Assembly: GCF_033153115.1 (NCBI RefSeq)
Contig: NW_026889806.1
Location: 1,736,001 to 1,800,000 of the forward strand
DNA length: 64,000 bases
DNA from: Saccostrea echinata
Lineage: Eukaryota
Reading direction: 5' to 3'
Shown: in pieces, positions 1 through 10,745 of the stretch
Layout: every line of letters starts with the position of its first letter
Numbering within the stretch: the stretch's first letter is position 1
Translations under genes and position numbers: made by a program
Notes under the pieces: model-generated
The model's database searches: none
What the model saw: only the letters and a program-made list of their open reading frames with translations
What the model was told of the DNA's origin: nothing

Positions 1-1215
1 GATGTTTCTTCGTTGGGAAATGCAATGAATACAGTACTTGTATTTATCTTAACTCTTTTCGTCATTGAGATTTTTTCATACGTTAATGTCTTTGCACTCA
101 ATGGAGTAATTAAGCTGTAGACATCTTCAATTCAGAATAGTTTCTTATGTGTTATTTTCAAGACTGTTTTGATATCGGTTGCCATATTTTTCAATAAACT
201 AGAGCACATTTTTTTGTTAAGCATAAACAAATTGCAATGTGTTGAATTGGAAAAAAAAGTTTTAGCATGCATGTAATTCAGATTCAGTGCAGATGTTAAA
301 TTTCTACATCTTTGGTAATTATTATCAGATACCTTTCTGCTTATTTTGAACCAATATTTGTCATATGTAGTAACACCTTCTCTCTTTGTGAAAAAAACAA
401 CCTCTTTCATACATGTACATATATTGGGTAAAATTCTAGCACCTGCTTTCACAAAAACAACAAATATTGAGTAAAAGTCGGGTATCTATCACGAGTACCT
501 GCTTACACAAAACAAATTTACATAAAAAAGTCTTTCATTATTTATATGTGTGAAGCTTATCAAATAAAGTACCTATCACCCGTAATTGTGTGGTAATTTT
601 ACAATCCCTATAGAAGGCACCCATTAACAGACTCGTAGTTTAATTGTTTGGGTCGAATTCCCATTGCTAACTTAACAAAGCAATATCTTTAATTCTTCAT
701 ATTTATACAGTATTGCATTGTCTGCAAATCAGAGACGGATATCTACTTTCCAACGAAAAATCTAAACATTTAAACTAAAGGTCGTCATTAAGATGCGAAA
801 GATAAATTGAAATTTAATACAGACCATCTTCATAATTAATGAACCCGGATAAAGAGGGTATTGTGCGTGTCACATTTTTCAAGCGCCCACAGATAAAAAA
901 AAATATAGAAGTTCGCAAAATAACATCATTGCAAGTATGAATTCATTCCGTAAATTGATGTTAAAAAGTGGTGAAAGACAGGCCACCTAATGCTCATTCG
1001 TTAATTAGCAATTTACCGAGCTTCCTTCGCGACACTAGCGCACCATTTCTATAGAGCTGCGAGATCGCATTTCGCACCAGCCCTAATGGTCGCAAGCGGA
1101 AACAAGAGAGCGTGTTTGTACTGGGATGATGTTCCGATAATCTTTTGTTATAAGTTTTTGTGATATCATAATCTGTAAATTTCCTCTGTGACGGACACAA
1201 GTCACAACTCTTAAA

Positions 1216-1279
1216 CACGTCAGTTCTTTCTCTTCATTATAACTCCTACTGTCTTCTGATTGGTTAAGCGTCTATAAAA
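1216..1279 (+). promoter_or_regulatory. Core promoter of the RFamide precursor gene (CRE-like site, inverted CCAAT box, TATA box)
   Basis: CACGTCA at 1216-1222, ATTGG (reverse CCAAT, in CTGATTGGTT) at 1259-1263 and TATAAAA at 1273-1279, about 60 nt upstream of the ATG at 1337. Confidence 0.55.
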
Positions 1280-1336
1280 CTGTAATTCCGCGTTGCGGAC
1301 ATCCACTTTGAATTTGGTTTCTTTCCAGTATCCACT

Positions 1337-4009
1337 ATGATGTGTTTTGCAAGGTAAGGTTACTTACATTTCATTTATGTCCATCTATGCAATCAAAGTT
1401 TTCATTTACAAAAATTACAATATCCTTGGTTTTATCCACAAGGAAGAAATGAACAAAAAGGAATTGGAATTTTATTATATAACTTATTTTTTTATCTTTA
1501 CTTGAATTGTATTTTGATATATGTATTGGCATATAAAATAGCGCAATGTAAACTTTTCACAGCTATCAAAATAAAATCCATTGTTATTTGTTTAATCAAG
1601 GTTTAAATCATAATGATTAATTATATAAATAAATAAAATTATTATTTAGATTTTGAGAAAGGAACGATGGGAGATATTCTTTTATCTTCACGATATTTGC
1701 AGAGCTTTTAGCCACACATTATGTAGCAGTTTAAATCAACTAAATTAAGTGATTTTTGATATCTTAAAAAATTATATTAAAAGTATATAAAATCGGTGTA
1801 AATTTCCCACAGCTATACGTATATGGTTACGGCTTTGCTTTCAGTAGCAGCATGCTGAGACTATTTGTGGTTGCCTTCTGGACATTAACAATTGTGTTCA
1901 AACAAACACAGGGACTGTCTGCACTTGAAAATCTTCTAGCAGAGGAAACTAAAGACGATTATTTGAGGGATGTTGAAGCTGATGATTCGATGCTTGATCA
2001 GAGGGCACGGGAAGAAGGTGGGATCTAATGATATCCATTAATCTAATCCTAGAACAACATGAACAGATTAAAATATTGTTAATGGTCGCATGAGCATGTC
2101 AAAAATTACTCTATTAGTTTCTGGCTCCGACTTTCTGTTAATTTGTAAATGAATTTTGTAAATGTATCGAAATATAATGTTCAAAATTTGCGCATTAGTG
2201 TGACTTAAAAGTGCATTTTCCAAAGTACACGTCCTGATTGTTTTCAATGCGGAACGACCAATTACATATCCTTTTCGATAGTATAAACATTTAGCACGAA
2301 AAAAAACTTCGTGCCATTGAGATAATATTTTTTAAACGTTTAAAATTTTAAATTTTCCGAATGTATCAAATTTATCAATATTTATTAAATTTATCATTAA
2401 TGGACTTTTTCCAGAAAAGGTAAAGACACCTTAAAATAAGGTAAATTAATGATGTCTAGAAAATTCATCATTGTTTCTACGTTTGATAGATATTGCAAAC
2501 CAAATTTGTCGAGCATGGATGACATAAATTTCAAAATATTTGAATTACAAACTGACGCAATTTTGAATTTACTGAGGATTATTTGTGTTTTTGTTAAAGG
2601 CGTTCATTGCAGAACATTTCTTTTCAATTTAGATTTAAGAAAGCTTATTTTAAAGAAACTGCGATTTCGAGATCTTCAGAATGATTCAACAGCAGAGGGT
2701 CTCAGTAGCTTAGGTATGTATTGTCATTCTTATTTCTCTCATTAAATCGCACGGTGTAATAATTCGTTTCACTTGTCATAAAAAAAAATAACCTCTTTAA
2801 TAATAATATTTTATAATTTTTAATCTCAAATGTTTATTAGTCTTGTATATTTACACTCCATGGGCTTCCTTCGATAATTCTCGAAAAATATTTTTAAAAA
2901 TAATTTTATTTGTCAATGCAAAATAAACAAGACGTTCAGCTGCTATTTGAAAAAAAAAATAGACTAAATATATTCATGCATTTAAAAATAAACTTTAAAT
3001 ACATAATATATCGTAAAAAAATATGTATACCATTCAATTTGGCACAGACTTTCTTTGATCAATGACAATGTGCAATGCAAAAAGAGAAAGATCATTCAGT
3101 ACTAAAATATTCATAAAGAATACACTTCGGGAGTGCAAAACCGGAAGTCTTTATTCTACAATCAATAATACCTGCAAATGTCTTGGTAGAAGGAATCTAG
3201 ACATAAAATACATGAAATATTTTCATGATATATTATAAGTTGAGTTATCGTGGTAGAAGGTACTTAGCCGAGATGGGAAATGCCGGTAGACTTTGATAAT
3301 TGGATAAAATTTGTCATAATTGTATCTACTAAAATTGAACCGAATGTAAATAAATGGAAAATAATATTAATTTGAATTTTTGTTCTAGGAAAAAAGTTTC
3401 TAAGATATATTTTTTTTTAAACAATGCTCAAAATATATTTTTTACGTACTTTTGTATACCAAGGATGAAAAAGTCTCTTCACCTATTTGCTTCAGTATTT
3501 TGGTTTAATCTGCCAATTTTTTCTTCACTATGCTTAGGTGCTTTTCAGTATGCTTATTTCTCAATGACTGGACCAGATTTTGTGTACATGTTTTTTTTTT
3601 ATCGCCAGAAACAAGTGGATTTTTGTATTTTTTCCCCCGTTATTTTTATTTTATACAATGTTAATAGAAGTAAGGTTTATTTGAAGAATAATGCTTTTTT
3701 TGTTGTTGTTGTATTCATCTTAATCATAACGAACGGAAATTTAGAGATATTCCCCGCTGCACTTATGTTCTCAGAATATTGACGATGTTATAGGGTTGTA
3801 CAAAGATAAAAATGAAGAGAACAAGAAGACATTTCAAAACTGGGTATCTAGTTTAGATTTAAAAACCCCAAATGATTTTTCTGGGCTACTAGTATACTCC
3901 GACTTGCCTTTTGCATATTTTCAGTCTTTTCTCTTCTTTTTCTCTTTGTATTTTTTTTTTTGGAAGTTTCTTGTTTTAATGACAATTCTTTTCCCTATGT
4001 TTGTTGTTA

Positions 4010-4042
<33 letters not shown>

Positions 4043-4626
4043 AGGGGGGGGGGGTCTGTTTAATTTTGTTGTGTTGTTTTTGGTGTTTGATTTTTGTATT
4101 CATATACTGGACTATATATTACTAGTGATGTATTTTTCCTTTGTAATGCCCCGTTACCCTTTTCATTATTGCTCAATAATTAATTGATGCTTAACCCCTC
4201 TCCCCACCCCCTCTTAAGAAACTAAAGCTATTTTCAGGTCTTTGATATGACAGAGAATGTTTTTCAAAATCCAAATTTCAAATAATCAAAATCACCCCAC
4301 TGTGTGATATTTTAAATACTTCATATGACCTTTATATACAAAGTGGCATTTCGCTTATGGTTTCTTCTTTGAATGATCAAATCTTGTGAACTTTCTCATA
4401 ATCGTCATGTATGTTATATTAGAGTTTGGCATCAACTATGGAAACCAAACATTAAACAAAAATATAAAGTTAAAATTAATTTATTTTTCTATTTTTAGTG
4501 AAGCGAGTTCCGGATTCCTATCGATTTGGGGATTCTTTGGTGGACAAGGTGGCGGCGTTACTTCGCTTTAAAATGCGCCCAACAAAAAGTCCTCAAGTCA
4601 GGATGCCCAGTCTCCGATTTGGCTGA
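1337..4626 (+). CDS. RFamide-type neuropeptide precursor (132 aa, 4 exons), possibly 26RFa/QRFP-like
   Basis: Exons 1337-1353, 1845-2017, 2633-2713, 4499-4626; all GT-AG, phases consistent, 399 nt. Translation: MMCFASSSMLRLFVVAFWTLTIVFKQTQG-LSALENLLAEETKDDYLRDVEADDSMLDQRAREEDLRKLILKKLRFRDLQNDSTAEGLSSLV-KR-VPDSYRFGDSLVDKVAALLRFKMRPTKSPQVRMPSLRF-G*. Signal peptide, acidic propeptide, dibasic KR site and C-terminal RF-Gly amidation signal. AATAAA at 4932. Confidence 0.88.
4012..4041. repeat. (TG)n microsatellite
   Basis: About 15 TG units followed by a G-run, in intron 3 of the neuropeptide gene. Confidence 0.9.
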
Positions 4627-5644
4627 GCAAAGTGTTGAGAACTGTAAAATACAGAAATGGATTAGCTTCGTCTATAGGATGCATAAATAATAGATCAATT
4701 TACCATTCATTTGTAAATTTATACGGCAACTGTATTACATGAACAATTTACAGCCCCATGATATTTCTTGTAATTTTGTTTCTTTAAATATTGGATATAA
4801 AAATTCGAGTACTTAAACGTTATTAGTAAAATTTCACATGTTTGATCGTTGTCAGGGTTTGGAAGAATTCCGCTTTGGGAGAGAGAAGATGCCATTAAAG
4901 TCTATTATGAAATCAAATATTAAATATTTGAAATAAAGAACTATAAAACATCGGAATCAAAATGTCGTTAAAATTTGGTGGGAAAGAACATGTCTTATAA
5001 TTGTGACGAATATATAATCAAATTACAATCTATAGAAATTCAAATTATAGAATATTTGAAGAAAAGAAAACTAGAATATTATTGATATCTTCACAAGTGT
5101 AAAAACTAATTACTCAAAATTTCGTTTTAGTAAATGCTACTAAACTCGGCCATGAAATCAAATTTAGAAATATTTCAAGAATTCGATATATTTCGTTGAA
5201 GAAACCGAAAATGTCATTTGAGCGAGAGGTTGCTGAACTGAACTTATCGTGAATGGTGCTAAATGGTAAGCAACTTTCTCATAAACGTCACAGGTTTCAA
5301 AAAGACAAGTCCATTTGATATTTATTCGCTAATTATCGCTACATTTTTTATTTCTTTTTCAATCAACGGTCGACATGTAACATTCTGAATACAAATATTT
5401 GTGTATCACATTCAAAAACAAAGACCCTTTTAAAGATATTCTTAAATAAAAACATTATGATTTTCCTGCATCCAAACAGATAAAAGCCGAGATTTTTTTT
5501 TCAGCAAAGGATTTTCTGTCTTTGAACTTCCATGTAAACCCAGAAGTTTCAGTGCACATTTAAAAAACCGAACACAGATATAAACGGACAAGTATAGATT
5601 AAAATTAGATTGAAAGTGATAAAACTGCAGCGTTTATAGTAAAT

Positions 5645-6096
5645 GTTCAATAGGTTGGGACCAATCACCCAAATGGATATAATAACCGATCTGGGATATA
5701 ATATCCCAAATGGGATATTTTTGTAAATTTAAGTGCAAAAAGAAAATTTTTATTTTGGCTATAAATATGAATCCCTATCAAAATACTTAAAAAGGAAAAA
5801 CTTTCGGCAAGCAGGTTTTTCTGCAACTCTACAGTTTCTTAGATTGATCTTCAAGAAGTTTAGGAATTTCCGAGAGATCTATTTCTTAAACAGTGGGCAT
5901 ACAGAAAAAATTAAACTTGTTAACCAAAAGTTATTCCTTTTTAGGTATCTTGATGCGGATTAATGATATTTAAAACCAAAATAAATTTTCTTCTTTTTTT
6001 TTTTTTTTGCACTGTAAATTTATATCTCATTTTGGATATTATATCCCAAACGTGCTATTATATCCTATTTGGGTGATTGGTCCCAACCTGTTCAAC
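5645..6096. mobile_element. Foldback/MITE-like element (near-complete palindrome)
   Basis: GTTCAATAGGTTGGGACCAATCACCCAAATGGATATAATA... from 5645 is the reverse complement of ...TATTATATCCTATTTGGGTGATTGGTCCCAACCTGTTCAAC ending at 6096. Complementarity continues inward for more than 150 bp. Confidence 0.8.
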
Positions 6097-6589
6097 ACGT
6101 CTCTATCTTTTACTGCCGTGAAGGTGAAACTTCAGATATACTGTGCCACAATATATGCAAGAAGTATTGAAAATCAAATCTTGATACTCAAATATTTCAA
6201 GGAACTTTGAAAAATTTAAAGTCAATCCCCCCCCCCCCCCCATAATCACGAACATCGAAACGTATTATTTTCAACACTTTATACAACCATTCCTAATTTT
6301 GAAAAAAATAAAAACAAAAACAAAAGAAACAAAAAAAAAAAACAGGCGTTTTTGACATAATAGACAACTGCTTCTTTAAGAAAAATGAAACTTGGAAATT
6401 ATATCTTTTGATTGGTTATTTCAAACTAACTTTGTTAAAATACACACAAGTACTCTAAAATTGATATCAAACAGATGCTGGAATTTCTCAGTGACAAGAC
6501 TAATATTTACATTTTCACAGAGTCTGTCACATGTTTTCATATTTGGATGTTTTATTGACTTTATTTGATTATGGTCAATTAATCACTAA

Positions 6590-7850
6590 ACTATGTGACA
6601 AACGGGATGACATCAACTTTGCTGTCGTCTACTTTCCCTACACTTACGGGTATGTAGTAATATTTTGGGATCACCCGCATATAATGTTTTTGTCTTCAAA
6701 CTAATTCGATACGCAAGAGCATGTTCGTCATGAATACGATCAATTTATAAACCGAGGCATGCTCCCCCCCCCCCCCCAAAAAAAAAAATACGTTGATGTT
6801 ACAGGGCTTTTAACAATTTCGCTTAAGGTAAACATTTCGAAAATTCGATGTTCATTATAGTGACCTTTTCTACAAATACAACCTATCGTTAGGTCGTATT
6901 TTGACTGACATGTTTCACTCCAATTGTTAGGCCATTGTTTTATACTTATTTTGACTTCGGCTCACTCCGTTTGCCTGAACAATACAGAGATATATGAAGA
7001 TAACAAACAATAATCAAGCTCAAATATCCACTGAAACAATACAGATTGGAAGTGGAGCTAGTAAACACGAACCTCTCAAAGCATCAGAGGTGGGATCAAG
7101 TGCCATGGGGGAGTAAGTATCCAGTAGTCGACCTTTCACACCCGTCGTGTGCGTCTTGTCATGATCGGGCAAGCGGAAAAATCTGCAGACAATTCAGAGT
7201 GAAAATAATGGCCTTACAATTTGTTTGAAAAACGTCAATCCACATTCGGCTTAACGATCGATTGTATTTGCTTACAAGGTCCTTGTATTGACAATATTTT
7301 TCTTTGTCAATAGCTTTTCTTGTTTTAGAAATTGTTCGTACCTAGAACATGCTCTTGCGTATCGAATCAACTGGGAGTCATAAAGTCCATATGCAGATGA
7401 TACTGGTTTGTTTGTCGTTTAACGTCCCTCTCGAGAATTTTTCACTCATATGGAGACGCCACCACTTGCCGGTGGAGAGCTGCAAATTTTGACCTATACT
7501 CGGCCTTAGGGCCATTGAGCAGTGAGGGATCTTTTTTGTGCCAGCACCTACTGCGACATAGGACTCGGTTTATACGGTCTCATTCAAATGACCAGTCTCC
7601 ACATCCCGCAGTGGATTCGAACCGGTGACGTAAACCAACTTCTTATACTGCGATTCTTGAGCAGGCGCTCTAACCACTGCGCAACGCGGGTGACAGATGA
7701 TACTGGTATATTGCTACATAAATAAGGGAAATTGACGATAGAAAAGTTGAAGTAATCACGTTCATTTATATAATTTTATTGTTAGTTTGCCGTGACTTTT
7801 TTTCTCTAGTAAAATATCTAAATATGAAACAGATGTGTCAGACTATGTTA
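6590..7850. mobile_element. Degenerate Penelope-like retroelement fragments, tail-to-tail (about 6590-6985 on +, 7040-7850 on -)
   Basis: The + fragment reads as decayed L(Y/C)DKRDD(F/I)NFAVV..FPY...LIRYARAC. The - fragment matches the copies at 9000-9460 and 49900-50510. Confidence 0.7.
7408..7693 (-). mobile_element. tRNA-derived SINE with 14-bp target-site duplication, inserted in the Penelope-like relic
   Basis: On the - strand: A-box-like GCGCAGTGGTTAG, B-box GGTTCGAATCC and an (AAAC)-type tail. Direct repeat CAGATGATACTGGT at 7394-7407 and 7694-7707. The uninterrupted site is seen in the copy near 50360. Confidence 0.88.
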
Positions 7851-8268: not shown

Positions 8269-8666
8269 CCTTTATATCGCTTTAATCCGACTTACAAAAA
8301 AATTGGGGTGTGAAAAAAAAGATAAAGGTATTGAACTCCTTACATAGGGTACCCACATTCGCCATTAAAATACTTTTAAATCAAATTATTTAAAATTTTA
8401 CTCTCTATTCATTTATATTCATATATAAACAATCGACATTACTACCAAAGTTCATTCCGAAATTCCGTATACTGAATTTCGATGAACTTTAGTAGTAATC
8501 TAGATTGTTTATATGTGAATAGATATGAATAGAAAGTAAAATTTTAGTACATTTGATTTAAAGTATTTTATTGGCGAAACTGGGTAGCCTATGTAAGGAG
8601 TTCCGTACCTTCATTTTTTTTAACATCCATATTTTTTTGGTCAGTCGGACTTAAGCGATCTAAAGG
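8269..8666. mobile_element. Foldback/MITE-like palindromic element (about 400 bp)
   Basis: Arms CCTTTATATCGCTTTAATCCGAC... and ...GTCGGACTTAAGCGATCTAAAGG. Complementarity runs to a centre at GTATAC (about 8467-8472). Confidence 0.82.
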
Positions 8667-8689: not shown

Positions 8690-10745
8690 CTATTGCTTCC
8701 AAACTTTTCAATTACAAAAAACTGCAGTGCCTATAGATATCGAACATTTGAAACATACTAGTAATCCTCCAACGTTTTCATGTTCTTCTTCACCCTACTA
8801 CTATAGTTCTGCTGGAAGCATCATTACTGGGGACGTAAATATAGTTAATAATGAGGATCTTAAATCACTTATTCTAAAAAGGCCAAATTTCAAGGAACTC
8901 CCATCTTTCAATGAAAAAGGTGAAGATAACGAACAGTGATCGATCTCAAAAAATCTGCAAACAATACAATTCTGTGAAGAGGACATAAAACACAAACCTC
9001 TGGAAATTCCAGAGGTGGGATCAGGTGCCTAGGAGCATCCCCTGTTGACCGGTCACATCCGCCGTGCGCCCTATGTATCGATCAGGTATACGGAACATTC
9101 CGTAGTCAAATTCAGTATGAAAACAAAGGCCTTTTATTGTTATGAAACAAGTCAGCCAAAATACGACCCAATGATAGGTTATTTTTGCTAACAAGGTCAT
9201 TATAACGGCAATAAAATTTACGAAATGCTGACTTTAAACGAGAAATTCCTGTAACATCAACTTATCTGGGTTAAAAAAATGATTGTACTCGGAGCATGCT
9301 CTTAAGTATCGAATAAGTTGGGAGATGTAAACACCATATGCAGGTGATAGCGGGATATATTACTACATAAAGTCATCTCGTTTGTCATACAATTTAGTTG
9401 TTAGTTGGTCCTTATCGTCTATAGTTAGTAAAACATCCAAATATGAAACAGATCTGACAGACTCTGTGGTGTCTTTTATTTCAAGTTCACTAGGATATAT
9501 CGAATTGACACATGAAAGAAAATAACTATTTTTAATTGATAATACACCGTCGATATATCTAAATATCGAGTTGAGGACCACAGCAAGTATTTTCTTCTTC
9601 TCATGTAGAAGTTTTTGAATAAATTCTGCTCCATGAGAATATACCGGTAAAACAGGTCGGCTAATAAAAGGAACACAATTAGTGCCCATTAGTATTCCAA
9701 CAGTTTGTTGTCAAGCCTGGTCTCCGAAGACTACATAAATGTTAAATTGTCAATGAGGAACTCCAGCATCCTTTTCCTATCAAATTTAGAGTACTTGTGT
9801 GTAGAATCAGAGTGATTTTCAACAAAGTAATTTTGTTGATGACCAATCATAAGATAGGAAAATTCGCGACATTTTTATTGAAGAAGCAGTACGTTATCTA
9901 TGGTATCAAAAAGTCTAGTTTTCAATTTATCGTGAGGAGTGGTTGTATAATGTGTAGAAAAGTCGTACATTTTGATGTTACTGACTTTGAAGAAAATTGC
10001 GATTTTTAAGTTTCTAAAAGTTCCTTAAGGATTTGGAGAAACCACATCTGATTTACACCTTTTCTAGAATATGCTGTAGCAAGGTGCGTCTGAAGTTTCT
10101 CCTTAATGCTGTTAATATTTTTGTAAGGAGTAAGGATAGAGCCTTATCATAGCATTTGCTTTACCCTGCAATATATCTCTGTAATTTTATGAAGTTAATG
10201 AATCCAGTATAGGTAGGGTAGACCGAACTCACCTTGGTTGACTGGAATGTCAAAAGTTTTAAATACTGAAATGTGATTTTGAAGAATTTAAAAAGTAAAC
10301 TTCGAGTATATAAGTTGGATTTCCATAAGTAGAATTAAAACCAAGTTCTTCTAGAATACAGTTATAATAATGAGCCTCGCAAAAAAAGACGATATTGTTA
10401 CAAGCCTTGTCGACTGAGGCCATAACATTTTGTTTACCGGGGGTATGTAGTCTTTCTAATTCTTTGATCACCTTCGATTTAGTGAAAACGGAAGGATAGA
10501 TGGTTCGTATTATTATTATTATTGCCTTTTAAATTTCTTATACGATTCTTTAATATATTTCTTAAATATTTGTTCCAATCTGACAAAGTGTCCAGGTCTT
10601 CCTTTTCATATTTAGCCCAACGTCTGGAATAATCTTCGACAGAATTCATAATAGAAGTGAAGTACTGAGAGATAGGGGCTCCCTGTATTTAGGACTTTTA
10701 ATATGATCACTAAATAAGATCTTCATTTTCTAAAAGATCTTTTAG
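8690..10745 (-). mobile_element. Degenerate Penelope-like element with reverse-transcriptase relic (main body 8990-10745 on -, inverted fragment about 8690-8915 on +)
   Basis: Frameshifted RT motifs MGTNC, LLADLF, FRYIDGVLS and LTTKLYDKRDDF (ORFs 9363-9689, 9476-9676), plus VDKACNNIVFFC (10259-10471). The + fragment ITGDVNIVNNEDLKSLILKRPNFKE matches the - strand segment near 10670-10740. Confidence 0.8.

What the first reader, a model, noticed from the sequence alone, without database searches (positions are those of the whole stretch)
1337..4626. Hidden four-exon RFamide neuropeptide precursor producing a predicted 38-residue ...MPSLRF-amide
Seen: four small exons splice in frame into a signal peptide, an acidic spacer, KR, and VPDSYRFGDSLVDKVAALLRFKMRPTKSPQVRMPSLRF-G-stop. 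The ORF track shows none of this as a protein. Established: convertase cleavage at KR and amidation of a C-terminal Gly by PAM yield RFamide peptides. Inference: this is a single-copy long RFamide whose C-terminus (PSLRFa) does not match the molluscan families I recognise (FMRFa, LFRFa, luqin PQGRFa, NPF RPRFa). Monobasic cleavage could also release shorter forms such as MPSLRFa. I cannot exclude that it is an already reported bivalve 26RFa/QRFP-like precursor.
Basis: partly seen in the sequence, partly recalled or inferred. Interest (0 to 1): 0.85.

Follow-up and report, generated by a model that had tools for sequence, protein, structure and literature searches.

The report
Oyster SLRFamide neuropeptide precursor gene
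The four small exons really do encode a secreted RFamide neuropeptide precursor, but it is the rock-oyster copy of the SLRFamide precursor, which is already published and already annotated, so it is a correct call and not a discovery.

Summary
Exons 1337-1353, 1845-2017, 2633-2713 and 4499-4626 all have consensus GT/AG borders. They join in frame into 132 codons plus a stop.

The joined translation is letter-for-letter identical to RefSeq XP_061165307.1, "uncharacterized protein LOC133174244 isoform X1" of Saccostrea echinata.

It is the orthologue of Cragi-SLRFamide (Réalis-Doyelle 2021, PMC8398477) and of the scallop "LRF" precursor (Zhang 2018, PMC5996578). In C. gigas, mass spectrometry detected the amidated 38-residue peptide and SPQVRMPSLRFamide. 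The window's 38-mer differs at 3 of 38 positions, and its last 17 residues are identical.

The "hidden/novel" reading is not.

Two smaller points go beyond the papers:
- A bivalve-only profile finds clear gastropod members, so the family is not bivalve-specific.
- The Platynereis "SLRFamide" precursor, published as annelid-specific, shares the whole architecture. I compared it by eye only.

No sequence link to 26RFa/QRFP, NPFF or any Pfam family was found.

Transcript evidence could not be obtained because both tools that could have supplied it were unavailable. The scan's index holds no earlier SLRFamide finding on other DNA.

The parts
1259..1279 (+). Putative core promoter: inverted CCAAT (ATTGG, 1259-1263) and TATAAAA (1273-1279), about 60 nt upstream of the ATG
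   Evidence: Read from the sequence. This is an inference only; no transcript start data were available.
1337..1353 (+). Coding part of exon 1 (start codon, 5 codons + 2 nt), donor AAG|gtaagg
   Evidence: The N-terminus MMCFA is identical in P0006, P0055 (S. echinata) and P0054 (S. cucullata); O. edulis begins MMNVA.
1845..2017 (+). Exon 2: rest of the signal peptide (through G29, ending at 1914) and the acidic spacer. It has a tandem NAGNAG acceptor (1844/1845 or 1847/1848).
   Evidence: RefSeq isoform X2 lacks exactly one Ser at this junction in Saccostrea and in Ostrea. The profile hit has E 4e-5.
2633..2713 (+). Exon 3. It carries the family's most conserved internal motif, LRKLILKKLRFRDL (2635-2676), including a KK site.
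   Evidence: R-F-R is invariant in 34 sequences. The oyster-free profile gives E 6.8e-7. C. gigas mass spectrometry found a peptide starting just after KK.
4499..4626 (+). Coding part of exon 4: V, KR (4501-4506), the 38-residue peptide (4507-4620), the Gly amide donor (4621-4623) and TGA (4624-4626)
   Evidence: phmmer E 2.8e-18 to the C. virginica orthologue. The oyster-free profile gives E 2.4e-8.
4588..4620 (+). C-terminal 11 residues, SPQVRMPSLRF, preceded by the monobasic site RPTK. They are identical to the amidated 11-mer detected in C. gigas.
   Evidence: mass spectrometry table, 1315.7183 Da. One search computed the same mass from the window sequence.
4932..4937 (+). First canonical AATAAA after the stop. 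This is the likely poly(A) signal and would give a 3'UTR of about 320-330 nt.
   Evidence: Read from the sequence. This is an inference only.

Best explanation
This is the Saccostrea echinata orthologue of the SLRFamide (scallop 'LRF') neuropeptide precursor gene. It has four coding exons and is single-copy. The 132-aa preproprotein enters the secretory pathway through an N-terminal signal peptide, with cleavage predicted after ...TQG29. Prohormone convertases cut at KR92-93 and probably at KK71-72. Carboxypeptidase trims the basic residues. PAM converts the C-terminal Gly, which is directly followed by the stop codon, into an amide. The products are a basic 38-residue peptide ending in SLRFamide (predicted monoisotopic mass 4406.40 Da), made of a helical N-terminal half and a flexible, proline-containing C-terminal tail. 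A further monobasic cut after RPTK gives SPQVRMPSLRFamide (1315.72 Da). By analogy with other RFamides, the peptide(s) most likely act on a rhodopsin-type GPCR. In C. gigas the gene is expressed mainly in larval stages and at a lower level in the visceral ganglia. What is shown here: the gene structure in the sequence, identity to the RefSeq model, and family membership. What is shown only in the sister genus: processing and amidation. What is inferred: the receptor and the physiological role.
For: Consensus splice sites and an in-frame join. The joined translation is identical to XP_061165307.1. A one-Ser isoform pair fits the NAGNAG acceptor and is shared with Ostrea edulis. Exon 4 matches C. 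virginica XP_022327616.1 at 95% identity (E 2.8e-18); that is the very protein aligned as SLRFamide in PMC8398477. The C. gigas/angulata and scallop proteins named in the papers were recovered as family members. C. gigas mass spectrometry lists the amidated 38-mer, the amidated 11-mer and the post-KK fragment. The 34-sequence alignment has invariant RFR and SLRFG and a near-universal KR. Profiles that exclude oysters still select exons 3 and 4. The AF2 model gives helices at 3-26, 55-74 and 100-115 with an unstructured 116-132. The nearest language-model neighbours are almost all peptide-hormone precursors.
Against: No RNA reads or transcript contigs could be examined for this species, so the junctions rest on sequence signals, the RefSeq model and conservation. 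No peptide data exist for Saccostrea. No receptor or function is known for any member. The AF2 model has low confidence (mean pLDDT 64.6).
Confidence: 0.93

Rival explanations
1. The gene is as described, but the physiologically active product is the short SPQVRMPSLRFamide, or the internal LRF-containing fragment. On this view the 38-mer is only a processing intermediate.
For: The 11-mer amide and several N-terminal truncation fragments of the 38-mer were detected in C. gigas. The last roughly 8 residues are the best conserved part of the C-terminal peptide across molluscs. The internal KKLRFR motif is as conserved as the C-terminus, and both Crassostrea and Platynereis mass spectrometry show cleavage inside it.
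Against: The full amidated 38-mer was also detected. The helical LVxxVAALL segment upstream of the monobasic site is conserved from bivalves to gastropods, which suggests selection on the long form too. In many members the residue pattern at the RPTK position differs.
Confidence: 0.3
2. SLRFamide is the lophotrochozoan counterpart of vertebrate 26RFa/QRFP and signals through the QRFP-type receptors, which are conserved in lophotrochozoans and for which I know of no identified ligand.
For: The precursor design is similar: about 130 aa, with a single long RFamide at the extreme C-terminus whose N-terminal half is helical. QRFP-type GPCRs belong to the conserved lophotrochozoan receptor set (PMC8557429). 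A 26RFa cluster appears among the language-model neighbours at 0.89.
Against: Pfam PF11109 hits none of the 34 members at E<=10, and it does not hit this locus in a whole-genome scan. There is no match to any PDB chain. The language-model neighbours are a mixed bag (DH31, NPFF, UTS2B, CCK, NMU), all below the 170-feature mark. The C-terminal motif PSLRFa differs from GGFSFRFa.
Confidence: 0.1
3. It is a chance concatenation of short ORFs and not a gene.
For: No transcript data could be laid on the window.
Against: The join is identical to an independent RefSeq model. Orthologues exist in more than 30 molluscs with the same architecture. Oyster-free profile E-values are 1e-6 to 1e-8 within the window. 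Transcripts and peptides of the orthologue are published.
Confidence: 0.01

Closest known systems
Cragi-SLRFamide precursor of Crassostrea gigas (XP_011455361.1; Réalis-Doyelle et al. 2021, PMC8398477) and C. virginica XP_022327616.1
   Same: Same length class (130-132 aa), the same order of parts, the same KK and KR sites, and Gly followed directly by stop. The 38-residue peptide differs at 3 positions from C. gigas (F5Y, Y7F, I21F). Across the whole precursor, about 77-79% of positions are identical to the Crassostrea proteins. The C-terminal 17 residues are identical.
   Different: Different genus. The signal peptide and spacer have diverged. No mass spectrometry or expression data exist for Saccostrea.
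Scallop 'LRF' precursor (Mizuhopecten/Patinopecten yessoensis XP_021354453.1; Zhang et al. 2018, PMC5996578)
   Same: Identical DLRKLILKKLRFRDL motif, the DKVAALL helix core and the C-terminal VRMPSLRFG.
   Different: About 40% overall identity. The KR site lies 8 residues closer to the helix, so the predicted peptide is shorter. It was not confirmed by mass spectrometry in the scallop.
Platynereis dumerilii 'SLRFamide' proneuropeptide (Conzelmann et al. 2013, PMC3890597); also reported in Urechis (PMC7737342). Published as annelid-specific.
   Same: Read by eye: a signal peptide, an acidic stretch, LLLKNLRFRDLSN at the same relative position, KR, a C-terminal peptide of about 33 residues with a helical xELAxIL segment, and ...QSLRFG at the end. 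Mass spectrometry shows a cut inside the internal motif, as in Crassostrea. Expression peaks in larval stages.
   Different: Gly is followed by RRRR rather than the stop. It has Q instead of P before SLRF. No paper in the searchable library links the two families.
Vertebrate 26RFa/QRFP precursor (Pfam PF11109)
   Same: A single long RFamide at the C-terminal end of a precursor of about 130 aa, with a helical N-terminal half of the peptide.
   Different: No detectable sequence similarity. The C-terminal motif differs. The receptor relation is untested.

Membership tests
SLRFamide / 'LRF' precursor family (molluscs) | N-terminal signal peptide on a precursor of about 105-165 aa | tested here: met
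   Hydrophobic core at residues 9-24. AF2 models helix 3-26. This stretch aligns with the signal peptides of the family.
SLRFamide / 'LRF' precursor family (molluscs) | Internal motif L-x-K-[LM]-[LI]-L-K-x-[LM]-R-F-R-[DEQG] in mid-precursor | tested here: met
   LRKLILKKLRFRDL is encoded at 2635-2676. R-F-R is invariant in 34 sequences. The oyster-free profile gives E 6.8e-7.
SLRFamide / 'LRF' precursor family (molluscs) | Dibasic KR site upstream of a single C-terminal peptide with an L-[VM]-x-x-[VL]-[AQ]-A-L-L helix core | tested here: met
   KR at 4501-4506 and SLVDKVAALL at residues 103-112. AF2 models helix 100-115.
SLRFamide / 'LRF' precursor family (molluscs) | C-terminus ...[RS]-[ML]-[PS]-S-L-R-F-G at, or within a few residues of, the end of the protein | tested here: met
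   RMPSLRFG followed by TGA at 4624-4626. SLRFG is invariant in 34 sequences.
SLRFamide / 'LRF' precursor family (molluscs) | Significant whole-protein similarity to the named members | tested here: met
   The window protein (P0006) scores E 1.4e-57 against a C. virginica query. The published C. virginica and scallop accessions were recovered by name.
SLRFamide / 'LRF' precursor family (molluscs) | Mature amidated peptide present in tissue | not testable with these tools
   This is shown only for C. gigas by LC-MS/MS. Predicted masses for Saccostrea are 4406.40 and 1315.72 Da.
SLRFamide / 'LRF' precursor family (molluscs) | Spliced transcript from this locus | not testable with these tools
Indirect support comes from the two RefSeq isoforms that fit the NAGNAG acceptor.
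26RFa/QRFP (Pfam PF11109) | Match to the family profile, or a GGFxFRF-amide type C-terminus | tested here: not met
   No PF11109 hit for any of the 34 members at E<=10. The genome scan with PF11109 does not hit this locus. The C-terminus here is MPSLRFa.
NPFF/GnIH (PQRFa / LPxRFa; Pfam PF15085) and FMRFamide-related peptide precursors | Profile match; several RFamide copies flanked by basic sites | tested here: not met
   No Pfam hit. There is one amidated RF copy only. The only link is an NPFF language-model neighbour at 0.91 with 151 shared features.
Annelid SLRFamide proneuropeptide | Shared internal LRFRDL motif, KR site, helical segment and C-terminal SLRFG | tested here: inconclusive
   All four features are visible by eye when one search is compared. 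No formal alignment was run, because the annelid sequence has no reference here. The three word-indexed database searches returned no named annelid protein.

The most novel reading that the evidence does not exclude
SLRFamide is neither bivalve-specific nor annelid-specific. It is one ancient lophotrochozoan neuropeptide family. Gastropod members are shown here by profile, and the annelid SLRFamide precursor shares the whole architecture. It could be the missing ligand of the QRFP-type receptors that are conserved in lophotrochozoans. The first half of this statement is likely (about 0.8). The probability given below is for the QRFP-ligand half.
Probability: 0.1. Interest if true: 0.65.

Novelty: already known. 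Interest (0 to 1): 0.15.

Why it matters
For this locus, very little. The gene model is already in RefSeq (as "uncharacterized protein"), and the family, its processing and its amidated peptides are published for a sister genus. What this report adds is a proper name for LOC133174244 and its S. cucullata and O. edulis counterparts. The by-product is of modest interest to comparative neuroendocrinologists. The family reaches well beyond bivalves into at least five gastropod lineages, and it very probably equals the annelid SLRFamide family. That would make it a conserved, larva-expressed trochozoan peptide without a known receptor, and a reasonable candidate to include in GPCR deorphanisation panels.

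Tried and rejected

2. The joined model was not sent to any search tool. Searches used single exons by reference, then database proteins by id. The join was computed only inside local scripts, to check the frame and to compare it with P0006.

3. Pfam scan of all 34 members: only scattered chance hits, with no CRF, 26RFa, NPFF or FARP family. The UniProt label "Corticotropin-releasing factor domain-containing" on the Arion member was not reproduced.

4. PDB sequence search with the family profile: only a chance LLKHFRFRDLEE match in iduronate-2-sulfatase.

5. PF11109 against the whole genome: two sub-threshold hits elsewhere. One reads RKKGGFIFRF followed by T, not G, and I judged it chance.

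6. Paralogy inside the window. An exon-3-like stretch at 8853-8900 (EDLKSLILKRPNFKELP) gave tblastn E 0.006 with one query but only E 0.2-1.1 with profiles, and it lacks the invariant RFR. I treated it as not significant. The neighbouring secreted-precursor candidate at 11689-15333 shows no profile similarity.

7. Formal alignment of the Platynereis SLRFamide sequence was left out, because the sequence exists only as text in a paper supplement and has no reference here.

8. ESM Atlas: a generic peptide-hormone-precursor neighbourhood, with no family assignment.
Full report
**What is in the sequence.**
I read window 1200-4800 and joined the four proposed exons in a local script. All borders are canonical:
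- Exon 1 (1337-1353) ends AAG|gtaagg.
- Exon 2 (1845-2017) follows ttgctttcag and ends GAAG|gtggga.
- Exon 3 (2633-2713) follows ttttcaatttag and ends TTAG|gtatgt.
- Exon 4 follows ttctatttttag at 4499 and runs to TGA at 4624-4626.

The pieces add up to 399 nt, which is 132 codons plus a stop. The product has these parts, in order:
- a hydrophobic N-terminus (core at residues 9-24);
- an acidic spacer;
- a basic amphipathic motif, LRKLILKKLRFRDL, encoded by exon 3;
- KR;
- a 38-residue basic peptide (window:4507-4620:+);
- Gly directly before the stop.

Three flanking signals are inferences without transcript data. An inverted CCAAT lies at 1259-1263 and a TATAAAA at 1273-1279, about 60 nt before the ATG. 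The first AATAAA after the stop is at 4932-4937.

**Which gene it is.**
The joined model was never sent to a search tool.

Exon 4 (window:4498-4623:+) was run against 1.84 billion representative proteins. It gave two strong hits. The best (E 2.8e-18, 95% identity) is XP_022327616.1 of Crassostrea virginica.

Using that database protein by id, the word-indexed search returned:
- oyster members from C. angulata/gigas, Saccostrea echinata and Ostrea edulis;
- scallop members from Mizuhopecten, Pecten, Argopecten and Ylistrum;
- a Mytilus member.

One of them, P0006, is XP_061165307.1, [quoted passage not shown]. It is identical over all 132 residues to the window's four-exon join. The window is therefore S. 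echinata (contig C57 of a 923-Mb assembly), and the exon-4 sequence occurs once in that genome.

RefSeq isoform X2 lacks one Ser at the exon 1/2 junction. That is exactly what the tandem acceptor cag|TAG|CAG at 1845/1848 would produce. Ostrea edulis has the same isoform pair.

**It is a published family.**
A full-text search for the C-terminal motif hit two papers.

Zhang et al. 2018 (PMC5996578) listed a scallop precursor called "LRF", with predicted peptides ending ...KKLRF and ...VRMPSLRFamide. They proposed it as a new RFamide member.

Réalis-Doyelle et al. 2021 (PMC8398477) described Cragi-SLRFamide. They aligned it with C. virginica XP_022327616.1 and P. yessoensis XP_021354453.1, and reported expression mainly in larval stages and lower in adult tissues, including the visceral ganglia.

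Their Supplementary Table 2 lists the following peptides detected by mass spectrometry:
- the amidated 38-residue peptide;
- the amidated 11-mer SPQVRMPSLRFamide;
- several N-terminal truncations of the 38-mer;
- a fragment starting right after the KK of the internal motif.

The window's 38-mer differs from the C. gigas one at three positions (5, 7 and 21), and its last 17 residues are identical. The mass I computed for the window's 11-mer amide, 1315.7183 Da, equals the tabulated value. The predicted Saccostrea 38-mer amide is 4406.40 Da.

**Is it more than chance?**
Yes. A 34-sequence alignment (A2) has invariant R-F-R in the internal motif, invariant S-L-R-F-G at the C-terminus, and a KR site in almost every member.

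To avoid circularity I rebuilt the profile without the four oyster sequences, and again from gastropods only. I then scored all 2961 stop-to-stop segments of the window's six frames. Exon 4 and exon 3 were the top two hits both times:
- oyster-free profile: E 2.4e-8 and 6.8e-7;
- gastropod-only profile: E 9.5e-6 and 1.1e-4.

**How it most likely works.**
- Shown in the sequence: the signal peptide, the dibasic sites and the terminal Gly.
- Shown in the sister genus by mass spectrometry: cleavage at KR and KK, a monobasic cut after RPTK, and C-terminal amidation.
- Inferred for Saccostrea: the same processing, giving a long and a short SLRFamide.

An AF2 model built on A2 has low confidence (mean pLDDT 64.6). 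It does place helices at 3-26 (signal peptide), 55-74 (internal motif) and 100-115 (the LVDKVAALL segment), and it leaves residues 116-132 unstructured. This suggests a peptide with a helical N-terminal half and a flexible, proline-containing RFamide tail.

The receptor and the physiological role are unknown for every member. A rhodopsin-type GPCR is the default expectation for an RFamide.

**Comparison with known families.**
Membership in the SLRFamide/LRF family is met on every sequence criterion I could test.

No link to other families was found:
- No Pfam family matched any of the 34 members.
- The family profile hit nothing meaningful in the PDB.
- The 26RFa/QRFP model PF11109 does not hit this locus in a whole-genome scan. 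Its best hit elsewhere lacks the amidation Gly.
- ESM Atlas feature neighbours are almost all peptide-hormone precursors of mixed families (DH31, NPFF, UTS2B, CCK, 26RFa, NMU). All fall below the feature count that marks true family members. This supports "neuropeptide precursor" and nothing more specific.

The design is the same (one long RFamide at the C-terminal end), and QRFP-type receptors are conserved in lophotrochozoans according to PMC8557429.

**What goes beyond the papers.**
Réalis-Doyelle et al. state that the family appears bivalve-specific. A profile made only of bivalve sequences found clear gastropod members at E 2e-11 to 1e-5: Babylonia (two genes), Batillaria, Nucella, Littorina, Patella, Gigantopelta and Haliotis. 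Further bivalve lineages also appeared: Pinctada, Solemya, Sinanodonta, Mactra, Mya, Mercenaria, Dreissena and Ruditapes. Pomacea matched at E 2.5e-4. Candidula and Arion matched only weakly with that profile (E about 5e-3 to 9e-3). They scored strongly (E 1e-21 and 2e-17) with the wider 34-sequence profile, of which they are themselves rows; Bradybaena, which is not a row, scored 3.7e-21.

Separately, Conzelmann et al. 2013 list a Platynereis "SLRFamide" proneuropeptide as annelid-specific. Its sequence, printed in their supplement, shows the same order of parts:
- a signal peptide and an acidic stretch;
- LLLKNLRFRDLSN;
- a spacer, then KR;
- a peptide of about 33 residues with a helical ELAQIL segment;
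- ...QSLRFG followed by RRRR.

It also shows a cleavage inside the internal motif by mass spectrometry, and it is expressed mainly in larval stages. I judge the two families to be the same (about 0.8). No paper in the searchable library connects them.

**Limits.**
The splice junctions therefore rest on consensus signals, identity to the RefSeq model, the isoform pair, and conservation.

**Verdict.**
It is a correctly read but ordinary orthologue of a published and annotated neuropeptide precursor. The wider phyletic range is a minor addition. The scan's own index holds no earlier SLRFamide finding on other DNA.

Noticed in passing
Exon 1 (11690-11808) codes a signal peptide. Exon 2 (14927-15333) contains REKR, an internal TLRFG-T and a WCCPF-stop tail. 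The SLRFamide family profile finds no similarity to it, so it is not a tandem paralogue of the SLRFamide gene.
   Followed up: partly
window 8853-8919 (+): A short open stretch, EDLKSLILKRPNFKELP, followed by a GT. It resembles the exon-3 motif (tblastn E 0.006 with one query) but lacks the invariant RFR, and it scores only E 0.2-1.1 with profiles. It could be a decayed exon-3 relic or chance.
   Followed up: partly
window 1845-1848: A NAGNAG tandem acceptor (cag|TAG|CAG) explains RefSeq isoforms X1 and X2, which differ by one Ser. The same isoform pair is annotated in Ostrea edulis.
   Followed up: yes
window 5644-6097, 6670-7401, 8315-8621: Long, imperfect inverted repeats (31-90 nt arms, 71-94% complementary) with MITE-like structure. 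They lie in the intergenic region downstream of the gene.
   Followed up: no
window 4013-4056 (intron 3): A (GT)n microsatellite followed by a G-run, inside the 1.8-kb third intron.
   Followed up: no
window 16302-16467: A run of 166 N, which is an assembly gap or a masked stretch. I left it untouched.
   Followed up: no
P0002, P0008 (ENA/Logan contigs of 2.8-4.2 kb): Metagenome-style gene calls over unspliced C. virginica-like exon 4. They read through the TGA as W (RFG-W...), presumably because a non-standard genetic code was applied. They are annotation artefacts, not variants.
   Followed up: partly
L002:1501-1572 (G000:C6:8685062-8685133): The best genome hit of the Pfam 26RFa model reads RKKGGFIFRF followed by T-N-K, with no Gly. 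It scored 16 bits at E 6.4 and is probably chance.
   Followed up: partly
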